Assembly (NCBI GenBank): GCA_038087875.1
Contig: JAXLNO010004761.1
Location: 62,001-126,000 of the forward strand
DNA length: 64,000 bases
Source: Malacoraja senta
Taxonomy: Eukaryota
Direction: 5' to 3'
Numbering within the stretch: the first letter of the stretch is position 1; each line of letters begins with the position of its first letter. This document shows, one piece after another, positions 25,263-45,609 of this stretch. The notes below the pieces were generated by a model. The model was not told the origin of the DNA, did not search any database, and saw only the letters and a list, made by a program, of their open reading frames with translations. Both the position numbers and the translations under genes were made by a program.

Positions 25263-25350
25263 ATGAGGCCCAGGTTTTTCTGCAGCAGTTTGCCAGCTGG
25301 TTTGATGTTCGGTGTCTTTGTTTTCTTGCTTCGACCTGTTTCCACACAGA
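25263..25350 (+). CDS. Signal-peptide exon MRPRFFCSSLPAGLMFGVFVFLLRPVSTQ
   Basis: Acceptor tttcccacag ends at 25250, ATG at 25263, hydrophobic core LMFGVFVFLL, phase-1 donor cagA|gtaagt at 25351. Confidence 0.85.
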
Positions 25351-25499
25351 GTAAGTGCTTTCTCTTCACCGGTCACAATCACGTTGCTTTACTTTATCAT
25401 TGTCCATGTAAACCGACACCCCATTGTAAATCTCTCTTTCCTCTCCACGTCCCACAAATCCACCCCATCCTTGCTGGAGCTTCATTTGTGACAGGGAGA

Positions 25500-27990
25500 T
25501 GACTAGCAACTCAATGTTCCATGTTTCTATGGGAAAAAGATGGGGGAATTGCTCTATTAATCAGGGAAACTATCTTGTTGGCACTCAGAGTGGAGACTCT
25601 GGATGGTTTGTCCATTGAGGTGATATGGGTGAAAATTAGAAAGGTGCAAGCAATTCAACGGAATTGTACGAGAGGTCCCCCAAGAGTGAGCAGGAAATAG
25701 AGGAACAGATGTTAACACAGATTACTGAAAGATTACACAAATGGATGTCTTGGGGGGTGACTAATGGTATATTCAATAGGATGTTTTGTAACAGTTGTAA
25801 CAGTTGTGAATAGTGCAACGTGAGAAAGGAATCCAAAATGGACCTTGTGTTGGGAATGGGTCTGGCCAGGTGACTGATGTTTTAGTGAAAGAGTATTTTG
25901 GAGACAGTGAATACAACTCCATAAGTTTTAAAATTGGTTAGAATTGGGATAAGTCTGTTCTGTGCGACAAGACGTTAATTTGAGTAAGGCAAATGACACC
26001 ATTATTAGGCAGGAGCTTGGTAAGGTACACTCAGAGCAGTTGTTATTAAGTTACTCCAAGTCTGAGATTGACAATTGTCTGAAGGTCAGTTGATCCAAAC
26101 TCAAGACCGGCAAGTTCCAGTAAGGAGGAGAGATAAGACTGACAAAGTAAGGGAACCTGAGATGACCAAATAAATGTGTAAATTTGGTCAAAAATAGAAA
26201 GGAAACACATGCAAGGTTCAAGAATATGATAGCAGAGAGGGCCATTGAGGAATATAAAGCAAGGAGGCAAGAGCTCAAACGGGCGATTAGAAGGGAGAAA
26301 ATAGGCCACAAAATGGCTGTGGCGATTTGGAGTAAAGAAAGTTCCAAGGCTTCTTATACTTACATTAAAATCAAGATGGTAGACAAGGAGAAGGTAAACA
26401 AGGATAAATGAAGGAAACTGAAACTGGAGTTAGGGGATGTAGGTGAGGTGTCAGATAACTCCAGGGATAAGAGGAGCAAGGGAAAAGGAAAACAAAGGAA
26501 ATAAAATAAAATATGTCAGTAAAAAGGTGGGGTGGATTGTTTGGGGATTTGTTGCCTGAAAGTCAAGAATTCAATGTTCATACCATTAAGTTGTCAGATA
26601 CCCAAGAGAAATATGAAGTGAGATTTCTTCAGTTTGCATGTGGCCTCACTGGCAATGGAGGAGGCCAAGGACAGAAAGATCAGTGTGGGAATGGGAGTTA
26701 AAATGGTTTATTTGTTTAGAGAGAGAATTCAGCGAATTAAAGAACTGTGAGTCACATGACAATATTGGAAAGGATTCTTTGGGATATAATTGACTCCCAT
26801 TTGGAACAAAATAGATGAGGGGATTAAAGACAGTAGGCATGACTTTTACGTGGCATTGTCCACAATGATTTTAGTAAGGCACTTGGTAAAGTTCTCCATG
26901 ATAGACTGATGCTGAAGATTAATAAGCATGGGATTAACATTGAATTGTTTGTCAGGATTCAGAATGGGCAGACTAGAAAACAGAGGAAAAGGCAATATTC
27001 AGGCAGGAAATCTGTGACCAGTGGAGTTCTATATGGATCTCTGCCAGGACTACTGTCGGTCATGATTTAGACAAAGAATTTAAATGTAGATGGGTTGGTT
27101 AGTACATTAGTAGATGGGAACAAGATTGCTGCACTGTGAACAACGCTGTCAAAGTATCAAAGTATGTTGTAAAGTAATGAATGGGATATAGACCAGCTAC
27201 AGAAATGGGTGGACAAATGACAGATCAAGTTTAATCCAAGCATCTGTGAGGTGTTGCACTTTGGGAGGTTGAATATAAGGGGAAGATATACAATTAACGG
27301 CAAGGCCCTTAACAGCATTGGTGTACAGAGGGACCTTGGGATCCAAGTCCCAAACTCTCTGAAAATGGTAATACAGGTAGACAGCGTGGCAAAGAAGGCA
27401 GATGGCATGCCTTTGGTTGGATCATTGGGTATAAGAGTCAGGAAGTCAGGATGTGATGCAGCTTTGTAGGACTTTGGTTAGGCCGGATTGCAAGCATTGC
27501 ATGCAGTTCTGGATGCCCCGAAAAGATGCAGAGGCTTTGGAGACAGGGCTGAGAAGGTTTACAAGAATTATGCCTGTGTTACTGGATATTAGCTACAGGG
27601 AGAGGTTGAATAGACTTGGATTGTTTTCTCTGGAATGTTTGACATTGAAGTGAGGCTTGATAGAATTCTACCAAATTATGAGCGGCAAGGTCAATGTAGA
27701 CAGTCAGAATCTTTTCCCCAGGATGGAAATATCAAATACAAGAGGGCATGGGGGGTTTTTAGGTGAGAGAGGCAAAGTGTGAAGGAGATGTGAAGGACAA
27801 GTATTTTACAGTGGTGAGTGGCTGGAACATGCTGCTGGTGGTGTTGGAGGGAGATGTGTGAATGGGATTTAAGAGACTTTTGGATAGGCACATGGACATG
27901 CAGGGAATGGCGAGATATGGATTATGTGCAGGCAGATAAGAGTTGGTCGTGGCATTATGCTCGACATCGACCTTGTGGGCCGAGGGGCTT
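25500..27990 (+). mobile_element. Old, heavily degenerate CR1 LINE in intron 1 of the Ig locus
   Basis: Residual peptides LHFGRLN, QRDLGIQV, RTLVRP and ERLNRLGLFSLE, plus a CR1-type tail. Confidence 0.75.
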
Positions 27991-28421
27991 GTTCCTGTGC
28001 TGAACTGTTCTATGTTGTAAAGCACTGTGGAATGAGGAGCAGGCAGGGAGGCAGGAGCATGTTTATTTTGTTCCAGGTCTGTCCGACAAGGGCCGGGGAT
28101 GCGGTGTGTACAGGATCGGCCTGGTCTCCACCCACATCAGGAAACCCCGTCACAGGGAACACCGACTGGAGACCCGACACAAACGCCCTTCCACCTCCGT
28201 CTTTCTCCCACTCACTCTTCTCATGTCATGAAGTATCCCTGGATCAGGCCAGGTTATTCCAGCCAGCCATCTATTCACAAACTGTGTCCGTCTCACTGGA
28301 GGTTCTGTGGGAGATCAAAACATTCTGGAAATAAATGAAATTCAAAATTAATAATTACAGACATGGAGTGGAGGAAATGTGCTTAAAATGTTAATTCCTA
28401 CATTTTTCCTATTTCCAACAG

Positions 28422-28757
28422 AAATCAGAAATCAGATTTATTTCTTGGATAATGGAGGCGGCATTGTGTTAAAAGGACCGGACAATCCTGCGAGTGTTGT
28501 CTGGGAATGGGAACCACACTCAGGGCCGGGAAAACACGCTGTGGTAACTCTCCGCGCCGAGAACAAGGGCTTGTGGAGCAGAGAGCGGGACAATGGCTGG
28601 GGAAACATAGACAAGAACCAGGAGGTGGATGTGGATCACCGTACTGGTAATCTGGCAATAAACAAACCCACATTTAAATGGTCAGGATTGTTCACTTTGA
28701 CCGAAACACATCCGAGGAACCAGATCCTGAAACGATATGAAATATATGGGATCAAAG
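28422..28757 (+). CDS. Ig domain 1, V-like with no cysteines (KIRNQIYF...VLKGP...WEWEP...GNLAINKPTFKWSGLFTL...YGIK)
   Basis: Acceptor tttcctatttccaacag, 336 nt, open frame, phase 1-1, donor aaaG|gtgagt. C-strand Trp and E/F-strand pattern retained. Paralogous to exon 33317-33661. Confidence 0.85.
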
Positions 28758-28959
28758 GTGAGTGGGCGAGACACGGATCCACAATATGTTTCTCTGTAAA
28801 TAATGTCACGTGTAATGATGAAATATGGCGGGAATTGTGAGACTTCTTCCACCCGATGAATCTCCCAATGATACAATTGGGGGAAAGATTTGTCTTCATT
28901 GATTCTGTGGGCCTGCGGTGAGATTGTCGAGTGACACTGCTGCTCAATGTTACCCAGTG

Positions 28960-29935
28960 AACCAGATCCATGCCTCACTTGGTTGAGATCCCAGAGGAAG
29001 TCCTTCATCTGTGGAACTTACACTGGTGGCAGAGTTCCCACCTTGAGGGCGGTTGGGGGAGACATGACAGGGACAAATGGTCAAACGTATCAATCCAGTT
29101 ACATCTAAATGTTGTTTGCATTCACTGGTCAGAGTGTAGCCGGTTGCACCAGCAGTGTCACGGTGAACAGCCGGCATTTACCTGTGTGAATATGAACAGC
29201 TTCAGGACTTCCACCTATGCGTTTCACAACGAGGAATTCCACAACTTGCTGACAGTTCTTGCGGTGAATCTGCCAGCGCTCCCCTTCACTTCTCCACGTG
29301 GAGACCAGGACTGGAGCAGGAATATGCTGATATTCCCGGACACTGGCACTGGGAAAACTGCTCCCGGATCCGGTGCCTGCAGGGGTGGAGACTCTTCAGG
29401 AATCAAAACTAATCGTTATTGTAGAATTAGACTCTTTCATGATAAAAAATTGAAATATTCAATATTAATAAATGTGTTTACTTCTAAAGGTTGGTGCCAC
29501 TCAGAACCATTCCAACAGCATGGGAGCTTTAGCCGAGGATGAACAAGGCCTTTGCATCCTGTAGATAATTCTCCACAGGTGTAAAGGGATTGGGATTTGT
29601 TCATTGCTCTAACGTTTGCCGAGATACAGTGAATGAGGTTGGATGCAACTACTTTGATCTTCATGTTTTCCCCAGCGAAATTTCCATTGCAGAATATTCT
29701 AGGCTGCAGGAGTACGTGCTGAGGGACACACTGAAGATCAGTGCAGACAAAGCAAAGGCATTGTGGAATAGAACTACAGTCCATGGACCTTCTGCCACCA
29801 GTCCCCGCCGAGCTAAATCTAATGTACAAACCTCTGAAACACATGAATTGGTATAATCTCAGGATGCAGCATGAGTGTCAAGAGTGTTATGTACACAAAA
29901 TGTGTGAACACTGCCAAAGTGAGGATCAATAACAC
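28960..29935 (+). mobile_element. Degenerate L1/Tx1-like LINE 3' part
   Basis: Peptide LQEYVLRDTLKISADKAKALWNRTTV resembles Tx1-type ORF2 C-termini (from recall). Confidence 0.5.
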
Positions 29936-30306
29936 TATGTCTGTGTAGTCTGGACAATATCAAATTCAGATTTAGGTTCATATTAGTTCATTGTCATATA
30001 CATTTGGGTAAAACACATTCATTGTTCAGATAAAGTAAATTATAATAAAAGGTACATTAAAAAATGCAACAAAAACAATACAGCAGAATGGTGCAAAGAT
30101 TGCAGTGCAGTCTGAAGTAATGCAAAATAAAACTAACGATTATGAAAATGCCCCAGGGGATGATGAGTGTTTGTGGCTCTGGGCTTGGACTAGCTGGAGT
30201 TTAGAAGAATGAGGGGCGGGTCTAGGTTTTAAGTTGAGTTGAGCCCAGTCATTGGACTTGTACTAACCACTACTCACTCTGAATCTCATTGATCTGTTTT
30301 TCACAT

Positions 30307-30577
30307 TCGAGGCAAGTCCACAGAGGCCTCTGCTGGGCAGTGACGTCACACTCAGCTGCACAATCTCCAGACTCTCAGATACAGTCAGTCTTCACTGGAG
30401 ACACATCGACTCATCCCAGCAGAACAGGAGCAACACTGATCAGATCCGCCTGGATAACACGGTCTATCTGATGGTTCAACACGTTACAGTGGAGGATGGG
30501 AAGCTGTATGATGTGTGATTTGCAGGAAAACGGAAACATTGTTCACACAAGTAATGGAGATTTTACTGTAAACAACA
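30307..30577 (+). pseudogene. Ig domain 2, C2-like, disabled
   Basis: Aligns to exon 34704-34976 (VEASPQRPLLGSDVTLSCTISRLSDTVSLHW...). Acceptor reads cacAT instead of cacAG. Length is 271 nt (3n+1). An extra base near 30510 gives TGA at 30516-30518; removing it restores LYxCDLQENG. Donor aaca|gtgagt is intact. Confidence 0.85.
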
Positions 30578-31627: not shown

Positions 31628-31972
31628 ATTTATATAATGGGAAATACACACTTTACCGCTCCAGCACAGATCACAGTGAACTTCACCTAGGTTGTTCTGG
31701 GAGTTATGGTCGTAGCTATTCCCGTGCTCACTGGACCTGGGCACCTCTTCACCTTCATCAACAGCAGAAAGTAATAGCATCTGCAGAAGGTTCTCAGCCC
31801 AACAATGTCAAAGGGACCGACTTCGGGAATCGACTGGTGACCTCAGGGAAACCCTTCGATGGCAAGGATTTCAGTGTGAGGATTGTTCCCGTTTTGTTTC
31901 AAGATGCCGGAGTTTACGCTTGTTTTCTGGAATCAAATCGATTTCCCACCATTTATCTAATCACAGTAAAAG
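31628..31972 (+). CDS. Ig domain 3, V-set with Cys pair (ELHLGC...HWTW...DFSVRIVPVLFQDAGVYAC)
   Basis: 345 nt open frame, phase 1-1, canonical splice sites, classic DxGxYxC motif. Confidence 0.9.
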
Positions 31973-32050
31973 GTATGAGACAGAATGTTGCCACTGAGTT
32001 TACTGATGAACTTATTGTTTAAAATGTAAACAACCTGCTTGTTTCCACAG

Positions 32051-32311
32051 TCACAGCTGAACCGTCTGATGCAGTGACTGAGGGAGACACCGTTACCCTG
32101 ACCTGCTCTGTGTCTCACGTCATTGGGTCAATGAGACTGGTTTGGATCAATGGCGATGGCAAAAGTGTTGGAGAAAAGACACTGACTGTGGAAGAGAAAT
32201 CACCGAGTCTGGTTATTCAGAAAGCTGAGAGAGGCAGAGGGAACTGGAGATGTGGTTTGTTTCATCAAGACCTGCCACGGCTTTTTGTCCCGTACTATCA
32301 GGAGCCCCGTG
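32051..32311 (+). CDS. Ig domain 4, C2-set with WxC F-strand (VTLTCSVS...LVWIN...GNWRCGLF)
   Basis: 261 nt open frame, phase 1-1, acceptor tttccacag, donor G|gtaagt. Confidence 0.9.
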
Positions 32312-33316
32312 GTAAGTGATAAGGGTTTGTTCTTCATACTTAGAGTCATGATTGAGTTTTGATGTCGCTTATTGATCCTGAAATTTGAGTGGAATATTTT
32401 CTTCCAGTTTGAGTGGTCTAACTATGTTATGATCAATGAATTCTCAAATTTCAAATAACACTTCCCGAACCCCACTTCTCCCCCCCCTTCATTGTGCACG
32501 CATTTATCCCACCACCCAGTTATCCTATTCTCTTCCCTTCCTCTTTCAACTCATCTCCCACCCCTTCCTTGCAGTTTTCCTTTTATGTTCTTGCTCCACT
32601 TCCACCCATATCCCTCCCTCTGTTACTGATCTGACTGTAGATCAGTCAGTATTAGTTGACCTGATCTACGTCATGTTTTACTGCATGCCGCTGTGTACTC
32701 AAGCAGTCATCATATTATCTAGTCTGTTAGTCCAGCGTCTAGTTAGATTCGTTGCTGAGCTTGAGCTTACAACACCTAACTATTTGAGCTCTGTGTGTTT
32801 ACTATAACAAACAACTTCTTCTTATGTATGGATCCTGTTATTACACATGTTTATACTGACAACCTTTTGTCTCCATTTCACCCCTCCATTTTGTCATTAT
32901 CTCCATCCATCTACTCATCACCATTCCCCACCTATATCCACCTATCACTCACCATGCTTTGTCTCATGCCTACTTCCCTTCCCCAGTTGTCACTCTCCCA
33001 TTCCATCAGCCTGATAATGCATCCTGACATGAAACGTCATCAATCCATTCCCTCCACAGATGCTGCCTGACCCATTGAGTTTCTCCAACACTTTGCGTTT
33101 GATGAACATTCCACAATCTGCAGTTTCTTGTGTCTCCATGGAGACCCACTGGTCAGCGTGGACAGATTGCTGCAGAGGGCCTGTCTCCATGCTGTTCCAT
33201 GATGATGAATTATAACGTACAACTTAGTAAAGATTAATTCTCTGCAATATTGCTAATGACAAGGTCAGTGATAAATGATTGTCCAACATTTACACATTTG
33301 TTCTCTTTTCCTACAG

Positions 33317-33661
33317 GAAGAGGACATTCTATTTACTTTTTCCATCAGGAAGGCAACTTTGTATTGAAAGGACCAGACAGTCCTGGAAATGGCCCCATTG
33401 ACTTGGAATGGAGGCCACACTCAGGGCAACAAACCACAAAGCGATTGGCCACTTTCCGCAGAGAAGATCAGCAGTGGGCCGTACAATGGAGTGATGAGTA
33501 GAATCAAATACCAGGCATCTCCCAGAGGATGCATGCGGACTGGGGTACCCTTAATCTGAGGATCAGGATGCCCACATTCAAACTTGCAGGACTGTTCACC
33601 TGGAATCAGACACAGCCCGCTGGCAAACTCCTGAGACAGTGGGAACTATTTGGGATTAAAG
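33317..33661 (+). pseudogene. Ig domain 5, Cys-less V-like paralog of domain 1, with an in-frame TAG
   Basis: 345 nt, phase 1-1, canonical sites. Reads GRGHSIYFFHQEGNFVLKGP...WSDE*NQIPGISQRMHADW...PTFKLAGLFTW...LFGIK, with the stop at 33499-33501. Confidence 0.85.
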
Positions 33662-34075
33662 GTAATAGAGTCATAGTGTCACACAGCACTGAAACAGGCC
33701 CTTTGGCCCAATTCATCCATACTGACCAACTACCCATCTAAACATCCCATTTGCCCTCATTTGGCCCATATTCCTTCAACCTTTTTTTCTATATACCTGT
33801 TTAAATGCCCTTTAAATGCTGCACCTGCATCAAACACTTCCTCTGCTTGATCTTTCCATAAAGTATGTTCATGTACCACTCTTTTTGTCAAAAAACTGCC
33901 CCTAATATTAAGGTGTATATCAAATCTGCCCCTCTCACATTAAACATGGACTATCTAGTTTTTGATTCCCCAACCCTGGAAAAAAGACCATGTGCGTTTA
34001 CTATAGATATGCCTCTCATGATTTTATTCACTTCCATATAATCTCAGTTAAAGACATCCAAGAAATATAATCAGT

Positions 34076-34103
34076 CTGAAGAAAGGTCTCAACCTGAAAT
34101 GTC
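34076..34103 (+). ncRNA. Minimal type-I hammerhead-ribozyme-like motif with a complete core
   Basis: CTGAAGA, extra A, stem II AGGT-CTCA-ACCT, GAAA, T, GTC. Stems I and III are very short, so activity is unproven. Confidence 0.4.
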
Positions 34104-34143
34104 ACCTATCTATGTTCTACTATACTAAAAAACATCCCTACCT

Positions 34144-34580
34144 GGAAGCGTTGATGTGGGAGACGAGGGGGGCGAGGGGGACAGGTGGTCACTACCTGGA
34201 AGTGTTGATGTGGGAGACGAGGGGGCGAGGGGGACAGGTGGTCACTACCAGGAAGTGTTGATGTGGGAGACGAGGGGGCGAGGGGGACAGGTGGTCACTA
34301 CCAGGAAGTGTTGATGTGGGAGACGAGGGGGCGAGGGGGACAGGTGGTCACTACCAGGAAGTGTTGATGTGGGAGATGAGGGGGCGAGGGGGACAGGTGG
34401 TCACTACCAGGAAGTGTTGATGTGGGAGACGAGGGGGCGAGGGGGACAGGTGGTCACTACCAGGAAGTGTTGATGTGGGAGACGAGGGGGCGAGGGGGAC
34501 AGGTGGTCACTACCAGGAAGTGTTGATGTGGGAGACGAGGGGGCGAGGGGGACAGGTGGTCACTACCAGGAAGTGTTGAT
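34144..34580. repeat. 53-bp G-rich minisatellite, 8 copies plus a partial copy, in the Ig5-Ig6 intron
   Basis: Units start at 34144, 34198, 34251, 34304, 34357, 34410, 34463, 34516 and 34569, and are nearly identical. Confidence 0.95.
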
Positions 34581-34703
34581 GACATCACTGAGCACGGTAG
34601 CTCAACATTCAGCCGACTGTCTGTCTGCTGGAAAAAGACAATTCTGCCCACAGTAGTTCAGAAAGCTGTTGGTGAACTGAACCACATGTGTCTGTTTCCA
34701 CAG

Positions 34704-34976
34704 TTGAGGCAGACTCACCGAGGCCAGTGATGGGCAGTGACATCACCCTCAGCTGTACCATCTCCAGACTCCCAGATACCATCAGTCTTCAGTGGAAACC
34801 AAGAGGCTCATCTCAGCAGAACAGGAGGAACAACGCTGATCAGATCCGTCTGAATAACGCCGTCTATCTGATGATCCAACACGTTGGAGAAGGATATCCT
34901 AATCTGTACACATGGGAAGTGCAGGAAAATAGCTCCATTGTTCTCACTGGAGACACCAATGTTGAAGTGGATCAGG
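34704..34976 (+). CDS. Ig domain 6, C2-like, second Cys replaced by Trp (ITLSCTIS...LQWK...LYTWEVQ)
   Basis: 273 nt open frame, phase 1-1, canonical splice sites. Confidence 0.88.
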
Positions 34977-35296
34977 GTGAGTCCAAAGCTGCCTTGCAGC
35001 AGGTATTAAATAGTTCTTGATACCAAACTGTTCCACATGTTGTATAGTGAGCACTGACTCCACCCGTGGGCTTCCACACTGCAGGATGTGGACATTGCCT
35101 TTACCCTGGGACATGGTGTAAATATAAAATGGTGGCACTAAGATTGATGGAGCCACACAGGAGAACCAAGGGATTCATTTCAGTTCACCTGCATGAATCA
35201 AAGAGAATAATATCCAGTGATGGAAATAACATCTAGTTTTCAGTGTATAACTGAAGAGGAAAATGTGAACTAATTCAAGTATAAATGCAGAAGAAA

Positions 35297-35960: not shown

Positions 35961-36124
35961 TGTTGTTGAAGATGTGGGGGGAGGGGAGGGGGAACTCTAC
36001 AATCAGGAGGGGAGGATTGAGTCTACAATCAATTCCACTGTCTATAGAGCACTGAGCTTCAGGTTGTTGCGATGTCAACAGGACACCAGCTTTATGATTA
36101 GGGTGACTTGGACATCGTGCTGAA

Positions 36125-36505
36125 GTAAGCATGCAGGTACAGCAGGCAATGGAGAAAGCAAATGGCATGTTGGCCTTCATAGCGAGATTTGTGTATAGGA
36201 GCAAAGAGATCCTACTGCAGTTGTACGGGGCCCTGGTGAGACCACACCTGAAGTATTGTGTGCAGTTTTGGTCTCCTAGTTTGAGGAAGGACATTTTTTC
36301 TATCGAGGGAGTGCAGCATAGGTTCACGAGGTTAATTCCTGGAATGGCGGACTGACATATGATGAAAGAATCGATCGACTGTGTTTATATTCACTGAAAT
36401 TTAGGATGAGAGGGGATCTTATAGTAACGTATACAATTATTAAGGGATTGGGCAGGCTAGATGCAGGAACAATGTTCCCCATGTTGGGCGAGTCCAGAAC
36501 CATGG
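36125..36505 (+). mobile_element. CR1 LINE fragment
   Basis: MQVQQAMEKANGMLAFIAR...[13 protein letters not shown]. Confidence 0.88.
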
Positions 36506-36614
36506 GACCCAGCTGACATCCCAGAGCCGGGGGTTTGTCCCTGTGGAAACTCACAACATTGTATCTCGGCGTGTATGGAAATCTAATTCTTTGTTCCCTG
36601 TCCCTCTCTTGCAG

Positions 36615-36953
36615 ATTTACATAACAAGACGTACACAGTTTATCGCTCAGTCACAGATCACAGTGAACTCGACCTGATTTGTGAAGCTTCTCCTGAGCTC
36701 AGCGAAACCAAATGGACTTGGAAATCACCACGTTTCCAGAATCAAGAGAAGGAAATAGCTTCTTCTCACAGGTCTGAGCCGATACATGTCGACAGGAGCT
36801 ACTTTGGGAATCGACTGGAAACCACAGAGGGAAATGTGAATGGCAAGAATTTCCATGTGAGGATTGTCCGCGTGCAGTTTGCAGATGCCGGAGTTTACAC
36901 ATGTTCCACAGGATCAAATAAAAATGTGAACATTGAACTAATCACAGTTACAG
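36615..36953 (+). CDS. Ig domain 7, V-set with Cys pair (ELDLICEA...KWTWK...NFHVRIVRVQFADAGVYTC)
   Basis: Translated by hand because it is absent from the ORF track. 339 nt open frame, acceptor ctctcttgcag, donor acaG|gtagga. Paralog of domain 3. Confidence 0.9.
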
Positions 36954-37758
36954 GTAGGAGACCGGTTGTTACTACTTTCAAGAATTAAGTTACTGGTGTA
37001 GAGTTTCTAATCTGAGTACAGACAGCAATGTCAGCAGAAATTTCCAAGTTTGATGAATTATTTTACCTACAGAGCTTCCTCTTCAACTTATTTGTATTTT
37101 GCTGAACCCAAAATCTGCCCTAAACAACATTATTGGGAATCATATCAAATGTTATTTTCATTTATTTTGCTGAAAACACATTGTTTTATACATAAGAGAG
37201 GGAATATGATGAAATGTGATTCAGATAGGTGCAAATGAGCTTCTATCGGAAATATTTAAAAATCATTCAATTTCTCTTAACACATTCCCCAAGTTTCTTT
37301 GACCCCAAACGACACATCCTAATTTTTGAAGGCTCACTCGATGCTTAAAACTGAGTGTATTTTGTGGAATTTATCGGTTAATATTTTCCTGGATGAGTGT
37401 TGTGGCCGAAACTGTGGCCAGAGACAATGATGTGGGCATTGGTTGCTCTTTGTATAATTAGTTCAAAACTGTTGTGAATGATTATGGAAAAGACACTTGG
37501 AGAGGTACATGGATGGGAAAGGTGCAGAGGGATATGGGCCAAATGTGGGAACATATTTTAGATGGAGCATCTTGGGTGGCATGGATGAGTTGGGCTGAAT
37601 GGACCGAATTGTTTCATGCCGTATGACTATGCCTCTAACTCTTGATGTGTAATATAATTTTCACACTTAGAACGCCAGATACTGGTGTCAAAGTACTGAG
37701 AAGAACACAACACAATCCAGACAAAATTCATTGTTTTACGATTTTCTTCTTTCCACAG

Positions 37759-38028
37759 TCACAACTGAACCATCTGGCGCAGTGACTGAGGGAAAAAAGA
37801 TTACCCTGACCTGCTCTGTGTCTCATGTCACTGAGTCATTGCGACTGGTTTGGATCAATGATGAAGGCAAAGTTGTAGAGGAGAAAAATCTCATGCAAAC
37901 AAAGCAGGAGGACAATTCTTTGCAGCTGATTATTGCAATAGCTGATGGAGTAAGAAGGAAATGGACATGTGGTTTGTTTCAACAAAGCACAGCCAAGGTT
38001 TTCATTCTATATAATCTGCAGGTGAACA
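37759..38028 (+). CDS. Ig domain 8, C2-set with WxC (ITLTCSVS...LVWIND...KWTCGLF...LYNLQVN)
   Basis: 270 nt open frame, phase 1-1, donor aacA|gtaagt. Paralog of domain 4. Confidence 0.9.
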
Positions 38029-38644
38029 GTAAGTTTCTTAGCCTCTGCTCTTCATTATCTCGACACAGAGTTCTTGGCACGTTGCTATTCTTTTTGGATA
38101 ACTTTTAACATTCCATGTCTTACTGCAAGTAGAGCTCAATCATAGACATTTCCTTCAAACTCCTTGTCCATGCCTATAAGGTCACTTCAATTGTAAGTAG
38201 TCCAGGTCTCTGAAGCACATGTGAGCACATGGATCACTACTGCTGGCAGACCACTGACCAAGACCTGTGTTGGCCATCTCATTGAAGGTGATCGGGAATT
38301 TCATCATCAATGTCTGTCCTTGTTGATAAGTGTCTCCACAGGTATGAAAACTGGTCCAGTAGTATGAAAACCAGTGTGTCACTGTGAACCTTTTTGTCAG
38401 AGGTCAGTATAGTAAGGTGGGCAGCTTGGTGGAAGATCTTTGCCATAACAGCCAAACTGTGCCCCTTAAAGATCACAAAAGTAGTGAAAATCATCTTAAA
38501 AATAATTGTACAAGTTTCTTTCACCTGTTCTGATGCTGTAAAACATTACAGCGCTTGAAGCATCCACAGTAACTTCACCAAAGGCTGCCATGTCAGAACA
38601 GAAGATGTGGGGGAGGGAATACTGATGTCTTCACCTTGTCTGAG

Positions 38645-38950
38645 TATGATGGCTCAGTGGTAGGGTTGCTGCCTTACAGCGCCAGGGACCCGGGTTCAAT
38701 CCTGACTACAGGTGCTGTCTGTATGGAGTTTGTACCTTCATCCCGTGCCCTGCGTGGGTTTTCTCCAGGATTTCCGGTTTTCTCCCAAATTCCAAAGATG
38801 TACAAGTCTGTATGTTAATAGGCTTGATTTAATTGTATGTTGTCCCTGGTGTGTGTTGGATAGTGTTAGTCTGTGGGAATCGCTGGTTGGTGCGGACTCG
38901 GCGAGCAGAAGGGCCTGTTTCCGCGCTGTATCTCTAAACTAATCTAAACA
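38645..38950 (+). mobile_element. HE1-like SINE
   Basis: Full-length copy with a taaac tail. Confidence 0.8.
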
Positions 38951-39711
38951 TGCCCTTTCCTCCCAATCCCACCCATCCATTAATCCCTGCCCTTCATGGG
39001 GTACCAAGCCTCGGAGAAAGACGTTTTGTACAATGCTGACAGAAGGCAAAGCACTGATCCCTAACAGAGGAAGATCCTGTAAACACCCAGGCACAAAGAA
39101 ACAATCTCCACCACACATAGATCAATGAAGAGTCAGTGAAGCACAACGTGGAAAGTATCAATGTCCCAACAGGAACACTTTAATTCCTCACAGATAATGA
39201 CATCATCCAATCATAGAATTGTGGAATGGTTGTAGCACAGAAGGTGGCCATTTGACCCATCATATCCATGCTAACTCTCATCCAGAGCAACTCGCTAATT
39301 CTACCCCCTCTCCTTTTGCCATTACATTGCAGCTTTTTCATCACTATATATTTCTCCAATTCTCTCTGGAAAACCACGATAGAACCCAGCTCCCCAACTG
39401 ATGCAGACAGTACACTTCAGACTCCAACTACCTGCTGCCTAAAAAGATTTTCCTCAAGTCATTCTAGCATGTTTTCCCCTTTATTTTAAACCTATAACTT
39501 TTTGTGCTCAGCCTTTCCACTGAAGGGAGCATCCTTCCACAATCCATTCTGTTCAGACTGAATAAATGATGCATAAATGAACAATGATGCCATTGATGTG
39601 ATGAAAGAGCATTATTGACTCTTGTCTTCAAACTCTCTCTTCAGTGTGCCATGGTAATAACTGGACAGAGAACACCATAAATAGAATCTCAATGATACCA
39701 ACCATGTTTAC

Positions 39712-40030
39712 TGTTTAGTTTAGTTTAGAGATACAGCGCGGAAACAGGCCCTTCGGCCCACCGGGTCCACGCCAACCAGCGGTCCCCGCATATTAACACT
39801 ATCCTACACCCACTAGGGACAATTTTTACATTTACCAAGCCAATTAACCTACAAACCTGTAAGTCTTTGGAGTGTGGAAGGAAACCGAGGATCTCGGAGA
39901 AAACCCATGCAGGTCCTGGGGAGAAAGTACAAACTCCGTACAGACAGCACCCGTAGTTGAGATCGAGCCCGGGTCTCCGGCGCTGCATTCACTGTAAGGC
40001 AGCAACTCTACCGGTGCGCCACCGTGCCGC
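39712..40030 (-). mobile_element. HE1-like SINE
   Basis: Full-length, well-preserved copy. Confidence 0.82.
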
Positions 40031-41917
40031 ATTCATTGTGTCATCTCTTTGTGACATGTTTACAGTTTGACTTGCCGATTCAACTGCTTCAATGCACCAT
40101 CTGATGTGATTATTTGACTGAACACAGCAACCTGCTCCCTGATGGTCACTGTGTGGTATAGGTTGGTGTTATTAATCCTTGCTCCTGGCGAGCAGCAGTC
40201 TCCCCCTGGGACAGGACAACAGGGCTCTGACTACAGTCAGCTGAGAGTCCACTTAGGAATGAAGACTTTGGTTGTCCTCTGCCTGTGCCTCAGTGCCTGT
40301 AAAACCCTGCTCCGTCAGCCGCTGCACCAAGGGAGAAGCCACCCCCACCCACACCCACTCCCACTGTGGTGTCCCCACCTCCCAGATTGGAAATCTGTGC
40401 TCCCCGCTGAGCAGAGGCCTCCCCATGTACGCTCATCTAGCACAGTCTCACTATGGAGCAGAACTGAAGTTGAACTTTATTTTACAAGGGTCGCGCACAC
40501 CAGCCTCTCCATCCTTTGGCCTCATTGCAGACTGATGCTTTTGGGTGTTGAGCTGTCCTTAAAGGGCAGGAGATATCAATCAGTGAGTGAATAGATTAGG
40601 TGGTGTGTGGAATTAATGCATGGATCAACCATCTCCAATTTTACACTAAAAACACATGAAGATGTGTTCATTAGGGTTGCAATAATAATGTGTTCAACCT
40701 CATTGACATCAGTAGGCAATGGTTACATGCACAATACAGTTTTAGTACTTGAAGACCAAAATTAATTTTAGGAGTTGAAAATCCGAATGAAAAATAATAA
40801 TAATAATCAGCAGGACAGATAGGAACTGTGAAAGAGGAACAAGTCCAGCCATGATCGCATTAAATGGCGGTGCTGGCTCGAGGGGCTGAATGGCCTACTC
40901 CTGCACTTATTGTCTATTGTCAAAGATCCTTTCTATGAATCTGACAACGTTTTATTCATCATAAAACATGAATCACTTCTTTCCCTTTCCACGGATACTA
41001 CTCAAACGGCTGAGTATTTCTAACCTTTACAGTTCTTGTGCTCCTGGTTAGAGAGGATTGAAGCTGGAGGGCAATATCCACTCTGTTGTCAGCAGTGCTC
41101 ATTCAACCATTGTTCCAGGCTTAGACTATGATAAACATTTGTCCACTGTACAGTGGGAAGTATCACAGCAGAATCAGCTACTTTATCAGCCAACCATCAG
41201 CTCCCATCTCCTGCCTGAGGAAGTCAGCTGATTGTAACCAAGAAATGGAAACTTGTGAGAATGTTTACAGTCTATAACTGATGGCTACTGAGGCAAGTTG
41301 TGGCTCTCTGATCTTTCTGTGTAAGGTCAATTAATCTGGAAAAAAAAGACACAATGTGCTGGAGTAACTCAACGGGTCAGGCGGAATCTCTGGAGAACAT
41401 GGGTAGGTGAGGTTTTGGGTCGGAACCCTACTTCAGACTAAAGGGCTGTTCTGCAATGATCTGACCACGTGGTGATTGCGTCACCATCCTCTGTGTAAAC
41501 CATTATCAAATAAACATGCCAGAAGTTGAAGTATAGCTAGTGTAGTCATGTAGAAAATATGGTCTCCAATTTGCCCTCAATATGTTCCTATTTACTGAGG
41601 GATGAATATTGGACAGGAAACCAGGAGACCAAGGTATCTCCACTGCACTTTGGTGATTCAAACTTAAAGTGAAAACTTTGCCTTGTGTACCATCCTAATA
41701 TGGTCATAATTTAGGGAACTGTGTTTCCATGGACTCTGATTTCATACACAAGGTCTTATCCCACCATTAAATGTCTCTGACATACATCTGAAGCAATGTT
41801 CCTGGTCATTCTGGTGGATCTCATCATTAATGGGGTACAGTTTAAACACTGGATTGCTGCTTCTTTAAAATCAAGCCGGATTAAAGTCTTAATCAGAAAA
41901 TAATACTTATTTTCCAG

Positions 41918-41995
41918 AAATTAATGTGACCCCAGTACCTGAGATGAGCCATGTTACTGAATACATGTGTGTGAGTAGGAAGACAAAGCAAGAAG
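41918..41995 (+). CDS. Cytoplasmic exon with ITSM-like TEYMCV (INVTPVPEMSHVTEYMCVSRKTKQE)
   Basis: Acceptor cttattttccag, donor gaaG|gtaaat, 78 nt, open in phase 1-1. Confidence 0.7.
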
Positions 41996-42489
41996 GTAAA
42001 TAGATGACTCAGTCAATGAATCTCTAGTTGCAGAGGTGTTGTATTTGATGAAGGAACCTATTTCACATTTCACAGTTTTGTAACAAGAATGTGAGGAAGG
42101 GAACCTCAAGCACACAAACTAATTGATCAATTCAACCGTCTCTCTTGTGTCAATTCACCCCTCAGTCCCAATCTTCCCCATCCAACTGCAGGTCTTACTC
42201 TGCATTGGTCAATTGACTAATTTTCACTGGACTATCATGGTCAACCCATGAATGTTGAGACATCACCATGAACAACATATTCACACTCCTAATTTATTGT
42301 TGATCCTGATTAACAGCTTGGTTAGTGGCTCTCTAAAGAATGGACAACACTTGCCCTTTCAAAAGTCACCATCCCTTTCACAAAATATCATCTAGCATTA
42401 AATGCCTCCAATTCACTTTGCCACTAGTTCAGATTTTATTCTGAAGTGAAAATAACAACAACATTTCAGAATGGTTTGAGCATCATTAA

Positions 42490-42670
42490 TAGATGGCGGA
42501 TAGGTGATGTTTCGGATCGAGACCCTTCTTTTGAGTCTGAAGAAGGGTCACGACACGAAACTTCACCTATACATGTCCTCCAGAGATGCTGCCTGACCTG
42601 CAGAGGTAGTCCAGCACTTTGTGTCCATTTGTGTATTAACCAGCATCTGCAGTTCTTTGTTTCTACCTTA
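42490..42670. mobile_element. Penelope-like terminal repeat, inverted pair
   Basis: Hammerhead-like motifs back to back, centred near 42532. Confidence 0.6.
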
Positions 42671-43851
42671 GACAGAATCAGAATCATATTTTATTCGCCA
42701 AGTATGTTTTGCAACATACGAGGAATTTCACTGGCCAGGTCAGTCATACAATTAAAAAGCAACAGACACAAAAACACATTTTAACATGAACATCCACCAC
42801 AGTGACTCCTACACTTTCCTCACTGTGATGGAAGGCGAAATAAAGTTCAAGTCCTTCACGTGTTCTTCCTCGGTCAGGGACAGTATTGTTTTTGCCAGAA
42901 TTTAGACCACATTTCTGATGAATCTGATGAACAGAGAAATCTTTCTTGAAAAATCTGAAGGAACCTTTCAATAAATCAGTCATTGCTCATGTTTTAATGA
43001 TAAAAATATCAATTCCTTACCTTGTTCCACAGTATGGATCAATTGTATTCCACTGTGTTCCACTGTAAAGGGATCGATTGTATTCATATATTGTCTTTCT
43101 GCTGATGCAACAAAAGATTTTCCCAGAACCTCGGCACACATGACAATAAACTAAACTGAACCTCAGCTGATCATATCTCCCCATATTCCTTGATCTTAGT
43201 CCACATATGACATCTCTAGTTTGTGCTTTGCAGTCTTTTTTTCCACTAACCAGTGGTCTTTGTAATTTATGCTTCATTTATGTGTTGTGATGCCTTAGTC
43301 AAAATGCCTCTGATGCTGCTGCAGGCAACATTTTCATTGTACCTGTACCTCGCCATTGTTGTGTATCTGTCAATAAATTCCACAACTACTAAAATGTACT
43401 GAATGATTTGGCTCCAGCCAAATGTGTGGTAGAGAATGTAACCGATTCTTTGTTCTCCTCATCTTCATCCTTATTGTCTCTTGTCTTAAACCTTTACCCC
43501 TGGTCATGGTCTCCCCCAACAGGGAACATCTTCCTCCATCCAGACTGGTCTACCTGTTGGAAGTGACTATGTTTCCATGAGAACCATTGTCATTCTTCTA
43601 AACTCCACAAGCCAAATTAACTCAAATTCTCTTTGTAATTTCCACCATCCCAGGAAGAAGTCAAAACAAGGTGGTTAGGAGATGTGACTTTTCATGGAGG
43701 GTTTTTGTTAACTGCCGGAGGTACTCTATGGGTCGAGCAGCATCTATGGAGGAAAAGCGATGATCAGCGTTTCGTATCATGACCCTGCATTGACTTAAAT
43801 CATCCTTTTTCAAATACAAATACATTTTTTGTTTCCAACTTATTTCCACAG

Positions 43852-43908
43852 ATACAGAGGAAGATATTCATTATGGATCCATCTCTTTCCAGCCAAAAGC
43901 ATCTGGTG
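43852..43908 (+). CDS. Cytoplasmic exon with ITIM IHYGSI (DTEEDIHYGSISFQPKASG)
   Basis: Acceptor ttatttccacag, donor gtG|gtaaaa. An alternative in-phase donor lies 3 nt upstream. 57 nt, phase 1-1. Confidence 0.75.
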
Positions 43909-44102
43909 GTAAAATGCCTTTATTTAAATATGTTTTAATCTTTTATCACAGTGAGGATTATTGGCACTGAGCAGTCTGAAACCCTGATGTCTTTGGCCAC
44001 TTTACAACAGGATCAGGCATTCCTGGGATAAAGTCCCTCGCCCTGTCCGTGGACATGAAGTGGGACAGTTAGCTGAGGCTCAGTTAGGAGCCCAACCTTC
44101 TC

Positions 44103-44285: not shown

Positions 44286-44580
44286 ACAATAGCCACTCCA
44301 GAGATCCAACCAGTGACATCCAGGCTGCTGTTACAACACTGTTGTGCATTGTCGTTGGTGATGAGAAGTGAAACCAAGACACCATTTATGTCCATCTGAA
44401 GAACATTCTTCTGCACAACTCCTGACTGAGCTACAAGTGATCAGCACAAACTTCGTTGAATTACAACTTTTTGATATTGATTAGTAGGACTGGATGTTAC
44501 AATCCCTAAGTTTATTCACCACAACTGACACCCAATATTCTCGGGGGTGACCACGAGGTGATTTTGCTACCAATCAGACA

Positions 44581-45235
44581 CATCTTCAGTTGTGTACCTC
44601 AACATCACTGGGTGTTTCGGCCTTTTATCACAAGACACCCTCAGTCAAGGCAGGCCCACCGCAGGGTGATCAGCCCTGGGTGTGTGTCTTATGGTTAGCC
44701 TCTAGATGGTCACGTGGCAGCCCAGACAGCATCTATTCTCTTCAGCCACAGCCAGTGACTGCTCCATTCAGCTTTTTTCCTTCCATCTTCCTCTCTACCG
44801 CTGACTGTGGCTGGTTGGGCTCTGGACTCGTGTCCGTTGGTGGGACAGTACTTGGTTGAGCTTCGCCTGGGGTGCTGATACCCTGTGGACTGCGGTGGTT
44901 AACCTGCCACTGGGCTTCACTCGACTGATTTGACCTACCTCTCAGAAGGTAATGGTCAATGCGAGGCCCCTCACCAAGCTCTCCCAGGCACTTTTCCCTG
45001 CCCTGGTGGATCTTGAGACCCTTCTCTGATGTTATCTTTTCCCAGCCACAGATGCAGCTTCGTAGCTTATGTCCTGCCAGGGCTGCTGCTCTGTCAATTG
45101 CTGTGCTAGTTATCTTATTCATAGTCGATTCCTTCCATAGCAATATAAGGGTGTCTTGTTCATGCTGACCATTCCTGCAGCTCACTGTAAATGCAGAGGT
45201 ATGAGCATACAGATGACAGATGGGTTTTCTGGAAT
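44581..45235 (-). mobile_element. HERO/NeSL-like (RLE-type) non-LTR element, internally deleted
   Basis: N-terminal zinc-finger-like peptide LRSCICGWEKITSEKGLKIHQG...RIDHYLLRGRSNQSSEAQ, followed within about 200 nt by a putative 3' UTR. No RT. Family assigned from recall. Confidence 0.55.
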
Positions 45236-45370
45236 TCAATGTCTTGTTGATCTACTGTCAGGAAGAGCAAAATGTAGTAAGCTTTAGACTTTTATATTCC
45301 ATTTGTCATTTCCTTTGTCAACATAATCCACCAGTGTCATTTTCAATTGTGATGTTTGCATTTATTACAG

Positions 45371-45414
45371 GCAGCAGCGATAATACACTGTCCTCCAATC
45401 AAGCATCAGGCACT
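45371..45414 (+). CDS. Cytoplasmic spacer exon (GSSDNTLSSNQASGT)
   Basis: Acceptor ttttattacag, donor act|gtaagt, phase 1-0, which matches both neighbouring exons. Confidence 0.7.
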
Positions 45415-45546
45415 GTAAGTATATTGATTCTTGTTGATGAAATCCCAGATCGTACAAGTATGAATTAAAGCTGTAATCTGTTTACTGATCTAAACAGCGA
45501 CAACAGCAACGGTCTTAAATACAATTGGTATTTCTTTCTCTTTCAG

Positions 45547-45609
45547 AACCTTGTTTCTTCAAAGGAAGATGAGTCATCTGTCATCTATGCTGAAACAGTA
45601 AAAACATAA
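45547..45609 (+). CDS. Terminal coding exon NLVSSKEDESSVIYAETVKT*
   Basis: Polypyrimidine acceptor tttctttctctttcag, phase 0, TAA at 45607-45609, tyrosine in an acidic context typical of receptor tails. Confidence 0.7.
   Translation, partial: NLVSSKEDESSVIYAETVKT

What the first reader, a model, noticed from the sequence alone, without database searches (positions are those of the whole stretch)
25263..45609. Eight-Ig-domain CD4/LAG-3/DICP-like receptor locus with an inhibitory-type tail
Seen in sequence: a leader exon, eight symmetric phase-1 Ig exons and four tail exons splice in frame, yet the ORF track shows them only as scattered fragments and misses Ig7. Established knowledge: a V(Cys)-C2 pair with WxC in the C2 F-strand is characteristic of CD4 and LAG-3 D1-D2 and D4, and teleost DICP D2 domains have a similar LxWxN...WRC pattern. 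CD4 and LAG-3 have four domains and DICPs one or two. Inference: this is a member of a lineage-specific chondrichthyan inhibitory receptor family related to those groups. I cannot place it as CD4 (no Cx(C/H) motif in the tail exons found) or as LAG-3 (no FxxL(D/E)). I cannot confirm novelty without a search.
Basis: partly seen in the sequence, partly recalled or inferred. Interest (0 to 1): 0.85.

Follow-up and report, generated by a model that had tools for sequence, protein, structure and literature searches.

The report
Damaged eight-Ig skate immune receptor gene
This is a real gene for an eight-domain inhibitory-type immune receptor from a large, unnamed shark and ray receptor family whose domains are built like CD4, LAG-3 and G6F, but this copy carries four disabling lesions and is most likely a recent pseudogene.

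Summary

Spliced RNA contigs of closely related species join Ig5-Ig6-Ig7-Ig8 exactly at the predicted sites.

The gene belongs to a multigene family found in sharks, rays and a chimaera, with more distant relatives in eels, salmonids and other early-branching teleosts. Every database name I saw was either "uncharacterized" or a generic look-alike. About equal numbers of members have ITIM/ITSM tails or a lysine in the membrane span, which is the pattern of paired inhibitory and activating receptors. Manta rays have intact eight-Ig orthologues.

Profile and predicted-structure searches place the C-D pair nearest CD4 D1D2 and LAG-3, and the A-B pair nearest G6F and CD4 D3D4. The CD4 and LAG-3 tail motifs are absent, so it is neither.

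This copy is broken. Ig2 has lost its splice acceptor and carries a frameshift. Ig5 has a stop codon where relatives read Tyr. A 592-bp deletion has removed the transmembrane exon. The juxtamembrane exon is missing.

The scan noted another eight-Ig ITSM/ITIM receptor elsewhere in this genome (s1-140236). I could not test identity with the skate MDIR family.

The parts
25263..25350 (+). Leader (signal peptide) exon, phase-1 donor
   Evidence: ATG followed by a hydrophobic core; donor AGA|gtaagt. tblastn identity to family N-termini is 62-82%.
28422..28757 (+). Ig1: A-type domain (V-like, no Cys pair), intact
   Evidence: AG/GT borders in phase 1-1. phmmer finds 32 proteins in 1.84 billion, the best at 77% identity.
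30307..30577 (+). Ig2: B-type C2 domain, dead exon. The acceptor AG has become AT at 30305-30306. A 1-nt insertion at 30511 leads to a stop at 30516-30518.
   Evidence: Alignment with Ig6, the A. radiata orthologue and the R. longicauda B exon.
31628..31972 (+). Ig3: C-type V domain with Cys pair
   Evidence: Pfam V-set; splice borders; tblastn to family proteins.
32051..32311 (+). Ig4: D-type C2 domain with WxC (NWRC)
   Evidence: Pfam ig/Ig_3. It is 84-90% identical to skate proteins and 92% DNA identity to the R. longicauda exon.
33317..33661 (+). Ig5: second A-type domain, with an in-frame TAG at 33499-33501
   Evidence: RNA contigs of related species read C at 33501, giving TAC. R. longicauda has Tyr.
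34704..34976 (+). Ig6: second B-type C2 domain (the F-strand Cys is replaced by Trp, as in orthologues)
   Evidence: Spliced joints 33661/34704 and 34976/36615 in contigs of X1, X2 and X4.
36615..36953 (+). Ig7: second C-type V domain
   Evidence: Pfam V-set at 7e-8. Joints 34976/36615 and 36953/37759.
37759..38028 (+). Ig8: second D-type C2 domain with WxC (KWTC)
   Evidence: Joint 36953/37759. Contigs end at 38029 and run on elsewhere.
41449..41450 (+). Scar of a 592-bp deletion that removed the transmembrane exon
   Evidence: Three-way alignment with A. radiata L002 (16850-17441) and R. longicauda L001. Both keep an intact TM exon with AG/GT borders.
41918..41995 (+). Tail exon 1, phase 1-1, ITSM (TEYMCV)
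   Evidence: It is 85% identical to XP_032868266.1 and to other skate tails.
43852..43908 (+). Tail exon 2, phase 1-1, ITIM (IHYGSI)
   Evidence: 90-95% identity. An X4 contig lies on 43652-43909 and has 98 further letters that do not lie on the stretch.
45371..45414 (+). Tail exon 3, phase 1 to 0
   Evidence: The interval is colinear with L001 and L002.
45547..45609 (+). Last exon: VIYAET (one residue off ITIM; several family members, including the R. longicauda orthologue, have [VI]IYAQI) and stop TAA

Best explanation
The locus is one gene of a large family of Ig receptors found in cartilaginous fishes.

Shown: the ectodomain unit has four domains in a fixed order.
- A is V-like and has no disulfide.
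- B is a C2 domain.
- C is a V domain.
- D is a C2 domain with WxC.
The unit is two copies of a V-C2 pair. In the predicted models each pair has one unbroken strand across the domain junction and superposes on CD4 as a two-domain unit. This gene carries the unit twice, giving eight Ig domains, as its manta ray orthologues do.

Inferred: intact members work as paired receptors. One set has a plain membrane span and a tail with a YxN site, an ITSM and two ITIMs, and would recruit SHP-type phosphatases and inhibit. The other set has a lysine in the membrane span and a short tail, and would pair with an ITAM adaptor and activate.

Shown in the sequence as assembled: this copy is of the inhibitory type but has been disabled by four lesions.
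- Ig2 has lost its splice acceptor and has a frameshift.
- Ig5 has a nonsense codon.
- A 592-bp deletion removed the transmembrane exon.
- The juxtamembrane exon is gone. That loss is shared with the thorny skate locus.

Inferred: the tail exons are still open, so the decay is recent. It fits birth-and-death turnover in an immune multigene family. Any transcript would end in Ig5. If Ig2 and Ig5 were skipped, it would encode a secreted protein carrying a tail that no longer has a role.
For: Family.
- Only 32 proteins in 1.84 billion match Ig1. They are RefSeq or GenBank models of Amblyraja, Rhinoraja, Leucoraja, Mobula, Narcine, Pristis, Scyliorhinus, Heterodontus, Callorhinchus and others, named 'uncharacterized' or given a generic look-alike name.
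- Where neighbouring domains were all detected, they follow the cycle A-B-C-D; some models skip or repeat a type (A-B-D, A-C-D, a doubled D).
- Mobula P0008, P0036 and P0037 are A-B-C-D-A-B-C-D plus TM plus tail. Their second half is 61-79% identical to Ig5-Ig8.
- Of 110 members, 33 have a plain TM with ITIM/ITSM and 31 have a charged residue, nearly always Lys, in the membrane span and no ITIM.

Fold.
- hhalign of A-B against C-D gives probability 97% and E 2.8e-11 over 169 columns.
- The AlphaFold models have pLDDT 86 and 85. Each has one long strand across the domain junction.
- Foldseek with the C-D model puts CD4 D1D2 in the top 14 of PDB (TM 0.58-0.75). LAG-3 and rat CD4 D3D4 follow. All of the top 14 Swiss-Prot models are CD4.
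- Foldseek with the A-B model puts G6F first, and CD4 D3D4 scores TM 0.63-0.66.
- The profile of C-D against PDB sequences ranks LAG-3 first at 1.4e-13, with WxC aligned.
- WxC is present in D domains: W in 88 of 90, C in 90 of 90.

Lesions: Ig2; Ig5; TM exon; juxtamembrane exon.

Orthology of the compared loci: 88-94% DNA identity, colinear through introns.
Against: - No reads of the same species could be laid, so each lesion rests on this one assembly.
- A search for the deletion junction in public runs listed none, but it used only 2 sampled words.
- All Ig exons are phase 1-1 and the tail frame is preserved. Skipping Ig2 and Ig5 would therefore give an in-frame secreted six-Ig product.
- Several RefSeq models in A. 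radiata and L. erinacea also join a D domain straight to tail exon 1 without a membrane span. A soluble form could be a used isoform.
- The inhibitory and activating roles are inferred from motifs alone.
- The structures are predictions for an orthologue (Mobula), not for the window's own protein.
Confidence: 0.7

Rival explanations
1. The gene is functional and makes a secreted decoy. Ig2 and Ig5 are skipped (all exons are phase 1-1), and Ig8 is spliced directly to tail exon 1. The product is a soluble six-Ig protein that competes with membrane-bound paralogues for their ligand.
For: - The frame is kept across every proposed skip.
- The tail exons are still open.
- TM-less models with a D domain joined to tail exon 1 exist in A. 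radiata and L. erinacea (P0030, P0112, P0115).
- Secreted forms are usual in comparable fish receptor families such as DICP and NITR (bioRxiv 10.1101/2021.06.11.448072).
Against: - It needs two independent exon skips.
- Ig5 still has good splice sites, so it would normally be included and would bring the stop codon into the message.
- A signalling tail on a secreted protein has no role.
- Four separate lesions in one gene are more simply read as decay.
Confidence: 0.12
2. The lesions are errors of the assembly or belong to one null haplotype. The species has an intact eight-Ig membrane-bound inhibitory receptor here.
For: - RNA contigs of related species read TAC at the stop position and splice Ig5 to Ig8 normally.
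- The tail and seven of the eight Ig exons are open.
- The 1-nt insertion lies in a short GT-rich run where sequencing errors are plausible.
Against: - The four lesions are of three different kinds: two substitutions, a 1-nt insertion and a clean 592-bp deletion. It is unlikely that all are artefacts.
- The juxtamembrane exon is also missing in the A. radiata assembly.
Confidence: 0.12
3. The locus is the skate's own CD4 or LAG-3 gene, or a pseudogene copy of one.
For: - The best sequence and fold matches among solved structures are LAG-3 and CD4.
- The architecture is V-C2-V-C2 with WxC.
Against: - No Cx(C/H) and no (F/Y)xxL(D/E) in the tail exons here or in the family tails inspected. PMC10768021 uses these motifs to tell CD4 from LAG-3 within the family.
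- The tail is split over four or more exons, whereas the LAG-3 tail is one exon.
- There are dozens of paralogues per genome, including activating forms.
- RefSeq names shark CD4 and LAG-3 as such, according to PMC10768021, but not these proteins.
- The window holds no CD4/LAG-3 neighbour genes, only transposon ORFs and a zinc-finger ORF.
Confidence: 0.02

Closest known systems
CD4 / LAG-3 family (MHC class II co-receptor and checkpoint receptor)
   Same: - Four-domain V-C2-V-C2 unit derived from a duplicated V-C2 pair.
- One unbroken strand across each V-C2 junction in the predicted models.
- WxC in the F strand of a C2 domain.
- One V domain without a disulfide, like CD4 D3.
- Best profile hit is LAG-3, and best fold hits are CD4 D1D2 and D3D4.
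   Different: - No Lck clasp Cx(C/H) and no (F/Y)xxL(D/E).
- WxC occurs only in the D type; the B type has YxC.
- It is a multigene family with activating (TM Lys) and inhibitory (ITIM/ITSM) members, and with 2 to at least 15 domains.
- CD4-specific Pfam families do not match.
- Sequence identity to CD4 is only about 15%.
G6F (LY6G6F), MHC class III-encoded V-C2 receptor, and fish G6F-like
   Same: - The A-B pair model superposes best on G6F in Swiss-Prot models (E 8.7e-11, TM 0.63).
- Intact family tails carry a YxN site (HLYSNV). From my own knowledge, G6F signals through a Grb2-binding YxN site.
   Different: - G6F has two Ig domains and is a single-copy gene. Here there are four domain types in a multigene family.
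- The YxN-bearing exon is lost in this copy.
- No sequence-level test against G6F was possible.
Paired activating/inhibitory Ig receptor families (KIR, LILR, CD300; fish NITR, DICP, LITR)
   Same: - Multigene family.
- Near-identical ectodomains are coupled either to ITIM/ITSM tails or to a charged membrane span.
- It includes secreted and broken members.
- Exons diverge about as fast as introns.
   Different: - The domain types differ (CD4-like V-C2 rods).
- It is found mainly in cartilaginous fishes.
- No ligand is known.
Skate MDIR (modular domain immune-type receptors; Cannon et al. 2006, Immunogenetics 58:362)
   Same: From my recollection of that abstract:
- a large skate multigene family;
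- four ectodomain subfamilies;
- one to six domains;
- one form with a positively charged membrane residue and others with ITIMs;
- distant similarity to pIgR.
Here pIgR is the second-best profile hit.
   Different: - MDIRs are described as CD300/TREM/NKp44/pIgR-like (PMC3031540). No CD300, TREM or NKp44 chain is among the 60 best PDB matches listed for either profile.
- No protein of Raja eglanteria or named MDIR appeared in the family search.
- The paper and the sequences (ABC86796.1 and others) could not be reached. I put the chance that the two families are the same at roughly one in four.

Membership tests
CD4 | V-C2-V-C2 ectodomain with rod-like V-C2 pairs | tested here: met
   AlphaFold models of orthologous A-B and C-D pairs each have one strand running across the junction. 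As two-domain units they superpose on CD4 D1D2 and D3D4 at TM 0.6-0.75. These are predictions, not solved structures.
CD4 | Cx(C/H) Lck-binding motif in the cytoplasmic tail (PMC10768021) | tested here: not met
   None in the four tail exons or in the family tails inspected.
CD4 / LAG-3 | WxC in strand F of both C2 domains (D2 and D4) | tested here: inconclusive
   D-type domains have W in 88 of 90 and C in 90 of 90. B-type domains have Y-x-C in 59 of 70 or Y-x-W in 11 of 70, not WxC.
CD4 / LAG-3 | Conserved genomic neighbourhood (LAG-3 upstream of CD4) | tested here: not met
   Within the 64 kb there are only reverse-transcriptase ORFs, a THAP ORF and a C2H2 zinc-finger ORF. The window is too short to exclude more distant linkage.
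LAG-3 | (F/Y)xxL(D/E) inhibitory motif, with the tail encoded by a single exon | tested here: not met
   The motif is absent. The tail is split over four exons here, and over six in the R. longicauda orthologue counting the TM and juxtamembrane exons.
ITIM-bearing inhibitory Ig receptors (functional class) | Type I membrane protein with cytoplasmic (S/I/V/L)xYxx(I/V/L) and/or TxYxx(V/I) | tested here: inconclusive
   The motifs are present (TEYMCV, IHYGSI). The membrane-spanning exon is deleted in this copy. The feature is met in orthologues P0049, P0062 and P0036.
Paired receptor multigene family | Activating counterparts with a charged membrane residue and similar ectodomains | tested here: met
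   31 of 110 family proteins have a charged residue, nearly always Lys, in the span and no ITIM, typically with the span motif GYLxVKLxVAxGLI. 33 have a plain span with ITIM/ITSM.
DICP (bony fish) | D1 and D2 domain types with their diagnostic cysteines; linkage to the MHC | not testable with these tools
   No DICP sequence could be obtained. None of the teleost relatives of this family listed is named DICP, and no zebrafish protein was listed.
MDIR (clearnose skate) | Sequence identity with MDIR1-5 (for example ABC86796.1) | not testable with these tools
The indirect evidence leans against identity.
G6F | Two-domain V-C2 ectodomain, YxN tail, MHC class III location | tested here: inconclusive
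   Only fold similarity of the A-B pair was tested. Sequence and linkage were not.

The most novel reading that the evidence does not exclude
The family is an undescribed sister group of CD4, LAG-3 and G6F. It would be a pool of V-C2-V-C2 receptors, kept in cartilaginous fishes and some early-branching teleosts as an expanded set of paired activating and inhibitory genes. The single-copy MHC class II co-receptors of jawed vertebrates would have been drawn from the ancestral pool. Members might bind MHC or MHC-like ligands and serve as the NK-type receptor system that has not been identified in sharks and rays.
Probability: 0.2. Interest if true: 0.8.

Novelty: new variant of a known kind. Interest (0 to 1): 0.45.

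Why it matters
To my knowledge (no literature search here addressed it), sharks and rays have no well-described counterpart of the paired NK-type receptors of mammals (KIR, LILR) or of bony fish (NITR, DICP). The origin of CD4 and LAG-3 is also still argued from a few single-copy genes.

This family carries the CD4-type V-C2 rod, including WxC. It is expanded to dozens of genes, and it is split into ITIM-bearing and Lys-in-membrane forms. It gives a concrete set of genes for testing both questions.

The locus itself adds less. It is a recently broken copy. It is useful as an example of birth-and-death turnover, and as a warning that conceptual 'repaired' proteins from this cluster should not be annotated as functional.

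Tried and rejected
- **Single-exon searches against PDB sequences.** They gave only weak generic Ig hits (JAML, PD-1, pIgR, titin). The CD4/LAG-3 signal appeared only with family profiles.
- **Pfam on exons and on full-length relatives.** Only generic Ig families matched, and no CD4-specific family. A weak sub-threshold match of the TM plus tail to SIT (E 0.002) was not pursued.
- **Search for a TM exon.** I used a hydropathy scan and low-stringency tblastn with eleven family TM/tail segments. Nothing was found between 38029 and 41917. The deletion found later explained this.
- **Second read-laying run (37950-43940).** It was meant to show what follows Ig8 in transcripts. The output was swamped by repeat-derived contigs, and no joint from 38028 was listed. 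It gave only weak support: low-depth contigs across the interval, and one contig that stops at 43909, at the end of tail exon 2, with further letters that lie elsewhere.
- **Ig8 exon as query in the large protein database.** The aim was to catch transcript fragments running past Ig8. There were no hits in the allowed length range.
- **Public runs holding the deletion junction.** None was listed, but only two words were sampled, so this says nothing either way.
- **MDIR paper.** It was not held, either by DOI as I entered it (last digit mistyped) or by PMC id, and nor was a related review.
- **Supplement of the elephant shark genome paper.** It is not held, so its 'CD4/LAG3-like' genes could not be compared.
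- **DICP.** Only descriptions could be read, not sequences.
- **ESM Atlas feature search.** It returned generic Ig clusters, including a 'LAG3 fragment' cluster at score 0.91. I treat this as a lead only.

Full report
**What is in the sequence.** On the + strand between 25263 and 45609 lies a chain of exons of an Ig-superfamily receptor.

- The leader exon (25263-25350) starts with ATG, encodes a hydrophobic signal and ends at a phase-1 donor.
- Eight Ig-sized open segments follow. Seven of them have AG/GT borders in phase 1-1: Ig1 28422-28757, Ig3 31628-31972, Ig4 32051-32311, Ig5 33317-33661, Ig6 34704-34976, Ig7 36615-36953 and Ig8 37759-38028.
- Pfam calls Ig3 and Ig7 V-set, and Ig2, Ig4, Ig6 and Ig8 generic Ig. 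It finds nothing for Ig1 and Ig5.
- The eight exons are two copies of a four-domain unit. Ig1/Ig5 are type A, Ig2/Ig6 type B, Ig3/Ig7 type C and Ig4/Ig8 type D.
- Four small exons at 41918-41995, 43852-43908, 45371-45414 and 45547-45609 encode a tail with TEYMCV (ITSM), IHYGSI (ITIM) and VIYAET, which is one residue off an ITIM. A stop codon follows.

**Evidence from RNA.**

- No run was on record as RNA. Four runs of two related organisms, marked 'RNA?' (a guess; two of them 'probably DNA'), hold about 6-9% of the stretch's sampled words.
- Their contigs are about 95% identical to the exons. They carry GT..AG joints at exactly 33661/34704, 34976/36615 and 36953/37759. Ig5 to Ig8 are therefore spliced as predicted in relatives.
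- Contigs run on for 39-57 nt before Ig5 and for 96-222 nt after Ig8 into sequence outside the stretch laid.
- A second lay over 37950-43940 was dominated by repeats and listed no joint from Ig8. It did show low-depth contigs through the interval, and one contig that stops at 43909, at the end of tail exon 2, with 98 further letters that lie elsewhere.
- None of the listed runs held most of the stretch's words and no holder was on record as RNA, and both read-laying runs are used. Nothing is known about expression of this copy.

**The family.**

- A full scan of 1.84 billion representative proteins with Ig1 found only 32 matches.
- These matches, and the 89 relatives of one of them, are RefSeq or GenBank models from skates, rays, sawfish, sharks and the chimaera Callorhinchus. 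Each is named 'uncharacterized' or given a generic look-alike name such as VCAM1-like, CD276 homolog or CEACAM5-like.
- Weaker relatives at 25-30% identity occur in eels, where all four domain types appear in the same order. Relatives of those eel proteins occur in tarpon, salmonids, mudminnow and mormyrids.
- In 110 proteins, wherever neighbouring domains were all detected they follow the cycle A-B-C-D. The usual form is leader-A-B-C-D-TM-tail. Variants include C-D, A-B-D, A-C-D (and a doubled D) and eight domains, and one S. canicula model has 15 detected domains, lacking only a first A.
- Mobula birostris and M. hypostoma have eight-Ig proteins of 963-992 aa. Their second half is 61-79% identical to Ig5-Ig8 here. 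The eight-domain form therefore predates the split between skates and manta rays.
- 33 members have a plain membrane span followed by a tail with ITIM/ITSM. 31 have a charged residue, nearly always Lys, in the span, a short tail and no ITIM. This is the signature of paired inhibitory and activating receptors. The roles themselves are inferred from motifs.

**Relation to CD4, LAG-3 and G6F.**

- Single exons give only weak generic Ig hits in the PDB.
- A profile of 90 C-D pairs ranks LAG-3 first (E 1.4e-13, two stretches). One alignment runs from the V domain through the junction into the C2 domain and matches WxC to WxC. pIgR is second and CD4 scores 2e-7.
- AlphaFold models of the Mobula orthologue's C-D and A-B pairs are confident (pLDDT 86 and 85). 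Each shows one strand of 15-16 residues crossing the domain junction. PMC10768021 describes such a strand as a rarity among Ig structures and notes it has been used as an argument for CD4's V-C2 duplication.
- Foldseek with the C-D model gives CD4 D1D2 as the top 14 PDB matches (TM 0.58-0.75, rmsd 4.2-5.0 over about 197 columns). LAG-3 and rat CD4 D3D4 follow. The non-CD4/LAG-3 two-domain Ig proteins in the list superpose poorly (TM 0.36-0.41, rmsd 9 or more).
- All of the top 14 Swiss-Prot models are CD4.
- The A-B model is closest to G6F (E 8.7e-11, TM 0.63). CD4 D3D4 scores TM 0.63-0.66. Among PDB chains CD4 is its best two-domain superposition.
- A-B and C-D are homologous as pairs (hhalign probability 97%, E 2.8e-11, 169 columns). 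This is the same duplication history proposed for CD4 and LAG-3.
- WxC is nearly invariant in D domains. B domains have YxC or YxW. 49 of 70 A domains have no cysteine at all, like CD4 D3.

The gene is nonetheless not CD4 or LAG-3.

- There is no Cx(C/H) and no (F/Y)xxL(D/E) in this tail or in the family tails inspected.
- The tail is split over several exons.
- CD4-specific Pfam families do not match.
- The window's neighbours are transposon ORFs and a zinc-finger ORF.

**This copy is damaged.** I fetched two loci. L001 is R. longicauda LOC144591061 and L002 is A. radiata LOC116966230. They are colinear with the window through introns at 88-91% and 92-94% identity, so I treat them as orthologous. 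Against them the window shows four lesions.

1. Ig2 has AT where A. radiata, Ig6 and the R. longicauda B exon have the acceptor AG. An extra A at 30511 shifts the frame into a stop at 30516-30518. No alternative in-phase acceptor rescues the exon.
2. Ig5 has TAG at 33499-33501. R. longicauda has TAC, and all four RNA runs read C at 33501.
3. Between 41449 and 41450 the window lacks 592 bp that both other species have. That segment contains an intact TM exon with AG/GT borders.
4. The juxtamembrane exon (L001 11408-11509), which carries the YxN site in intact members, has no counterpart in the window or in A. radiata.

Exons and introns differ from R. longicauda by similar amounts: 89-93% identity for exons against 86-90% for introns. 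That fits fast evolution or relaxed constraint.

**Reading.** Four independent lesions of three kinds make a recent pseudogene, or a null haplotype, the best explanation. I put it at about 0.7.

- A secreted six-Ig decoy made by skipping Ig2 and Ig5 stays possible. All exons are symmetric and the tail frame is kept, and some RefSeq models in related skates also join D to tail exon 1.
- An assembly artefact cannot be excluded without reads of this species. A junction search listed none, but it sampled only two words.

**Known or new.**

- I found no paper that names this family.
- PMC6238376 mentions 'several CD4/LAG3-like molecules' reported with the elephant shark genome. That supplement is not held.
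- The skate MDIR family of 2006 resembles this family in outline. It is described as CD300/TREM/pIgR-like. No CD300, TREM or NKp44 chain is among the 60 best matches listed for either profile, and no MDIR-named protein appeared. The sequences could not be compared directly. I estimate about a one in four chance that the families are the same.
- DICPs could not be tested either.
- The scan's own notes record another eight-Ig ITSM/ITIM receptor and other ITIM receptors elsewhere in this genome. I did not check these.

Noticed in passing
window 34138-34581: A minisatellite of 8.4 copies of a 53-bp unit at 98% match lies in the Ig5-Ig6 intron. This intron is 1042 bp here against 754 bp in R. longicauda, and the repeat may account for part of the difference (not checked).
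   Followed up: partly
window 29167-29385 and 29629-29871: Two open stretches in the Ig1-Ig2 intron match the C-terminal parts of two short A. radiata models at 75-85% identity (XP_032885416.1 and XP_032868270.1; both are leader + A domain + this sequence). There is no Pfam match. They may be alternative terminal exons of 'A-only' secreted forms, or repeat-derived sequence swept into gene models.
   Followed up: partly
L002 14529-15835 against window 32711-40871: The A. radiata locus runs from the Ig4 region straight to the region upstream of the TM exon. It lacks the whole Ig5-Ig8 block. This is either a four-Ig version produced by unequal crossing-over or an assembly collapse.
   Followed up: partly
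L002 about 17085-17196: A. radiata keeps an intact TM exon with good splice sites, but its RefSeq model XP_032868266.1 skips it and joins the D domain to tail exon 1. Either the model is wrong or a soluble isoform is used.
   Followed up: partly
window 60958-62196 (- strand): A 412-aa ORF with at least nine C2H2 zinc fingers lies in the GC-rich end of the window.
   Followed up: partly
window 46631-46897 (+ strand): An 88-aa ORF has a THAP domain (E 4.7e-6). It sits just after a TG/CA-rich microsatellite and an N gap at 46051-46247.
   Followed up: partly
window 8272-10092, 12244-13470 (-), 21386-22231 (-), 35551-36327 (-): These are reverse-transcriptase ORFs, plus one ORF with an ALKBH8_N-like match in the Ig6-Ig7 intron. 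Copies of these repeats dominate the RNA contig libraries.
   Followed up: partly
P0012 and P0062 tails: The TM plus tail of intact family members gives a weak, sub-threshold Pfam match to SIT, the SHP2-interacting transmembrane adaptor (E 0.002-0.07).
   Followed up: no
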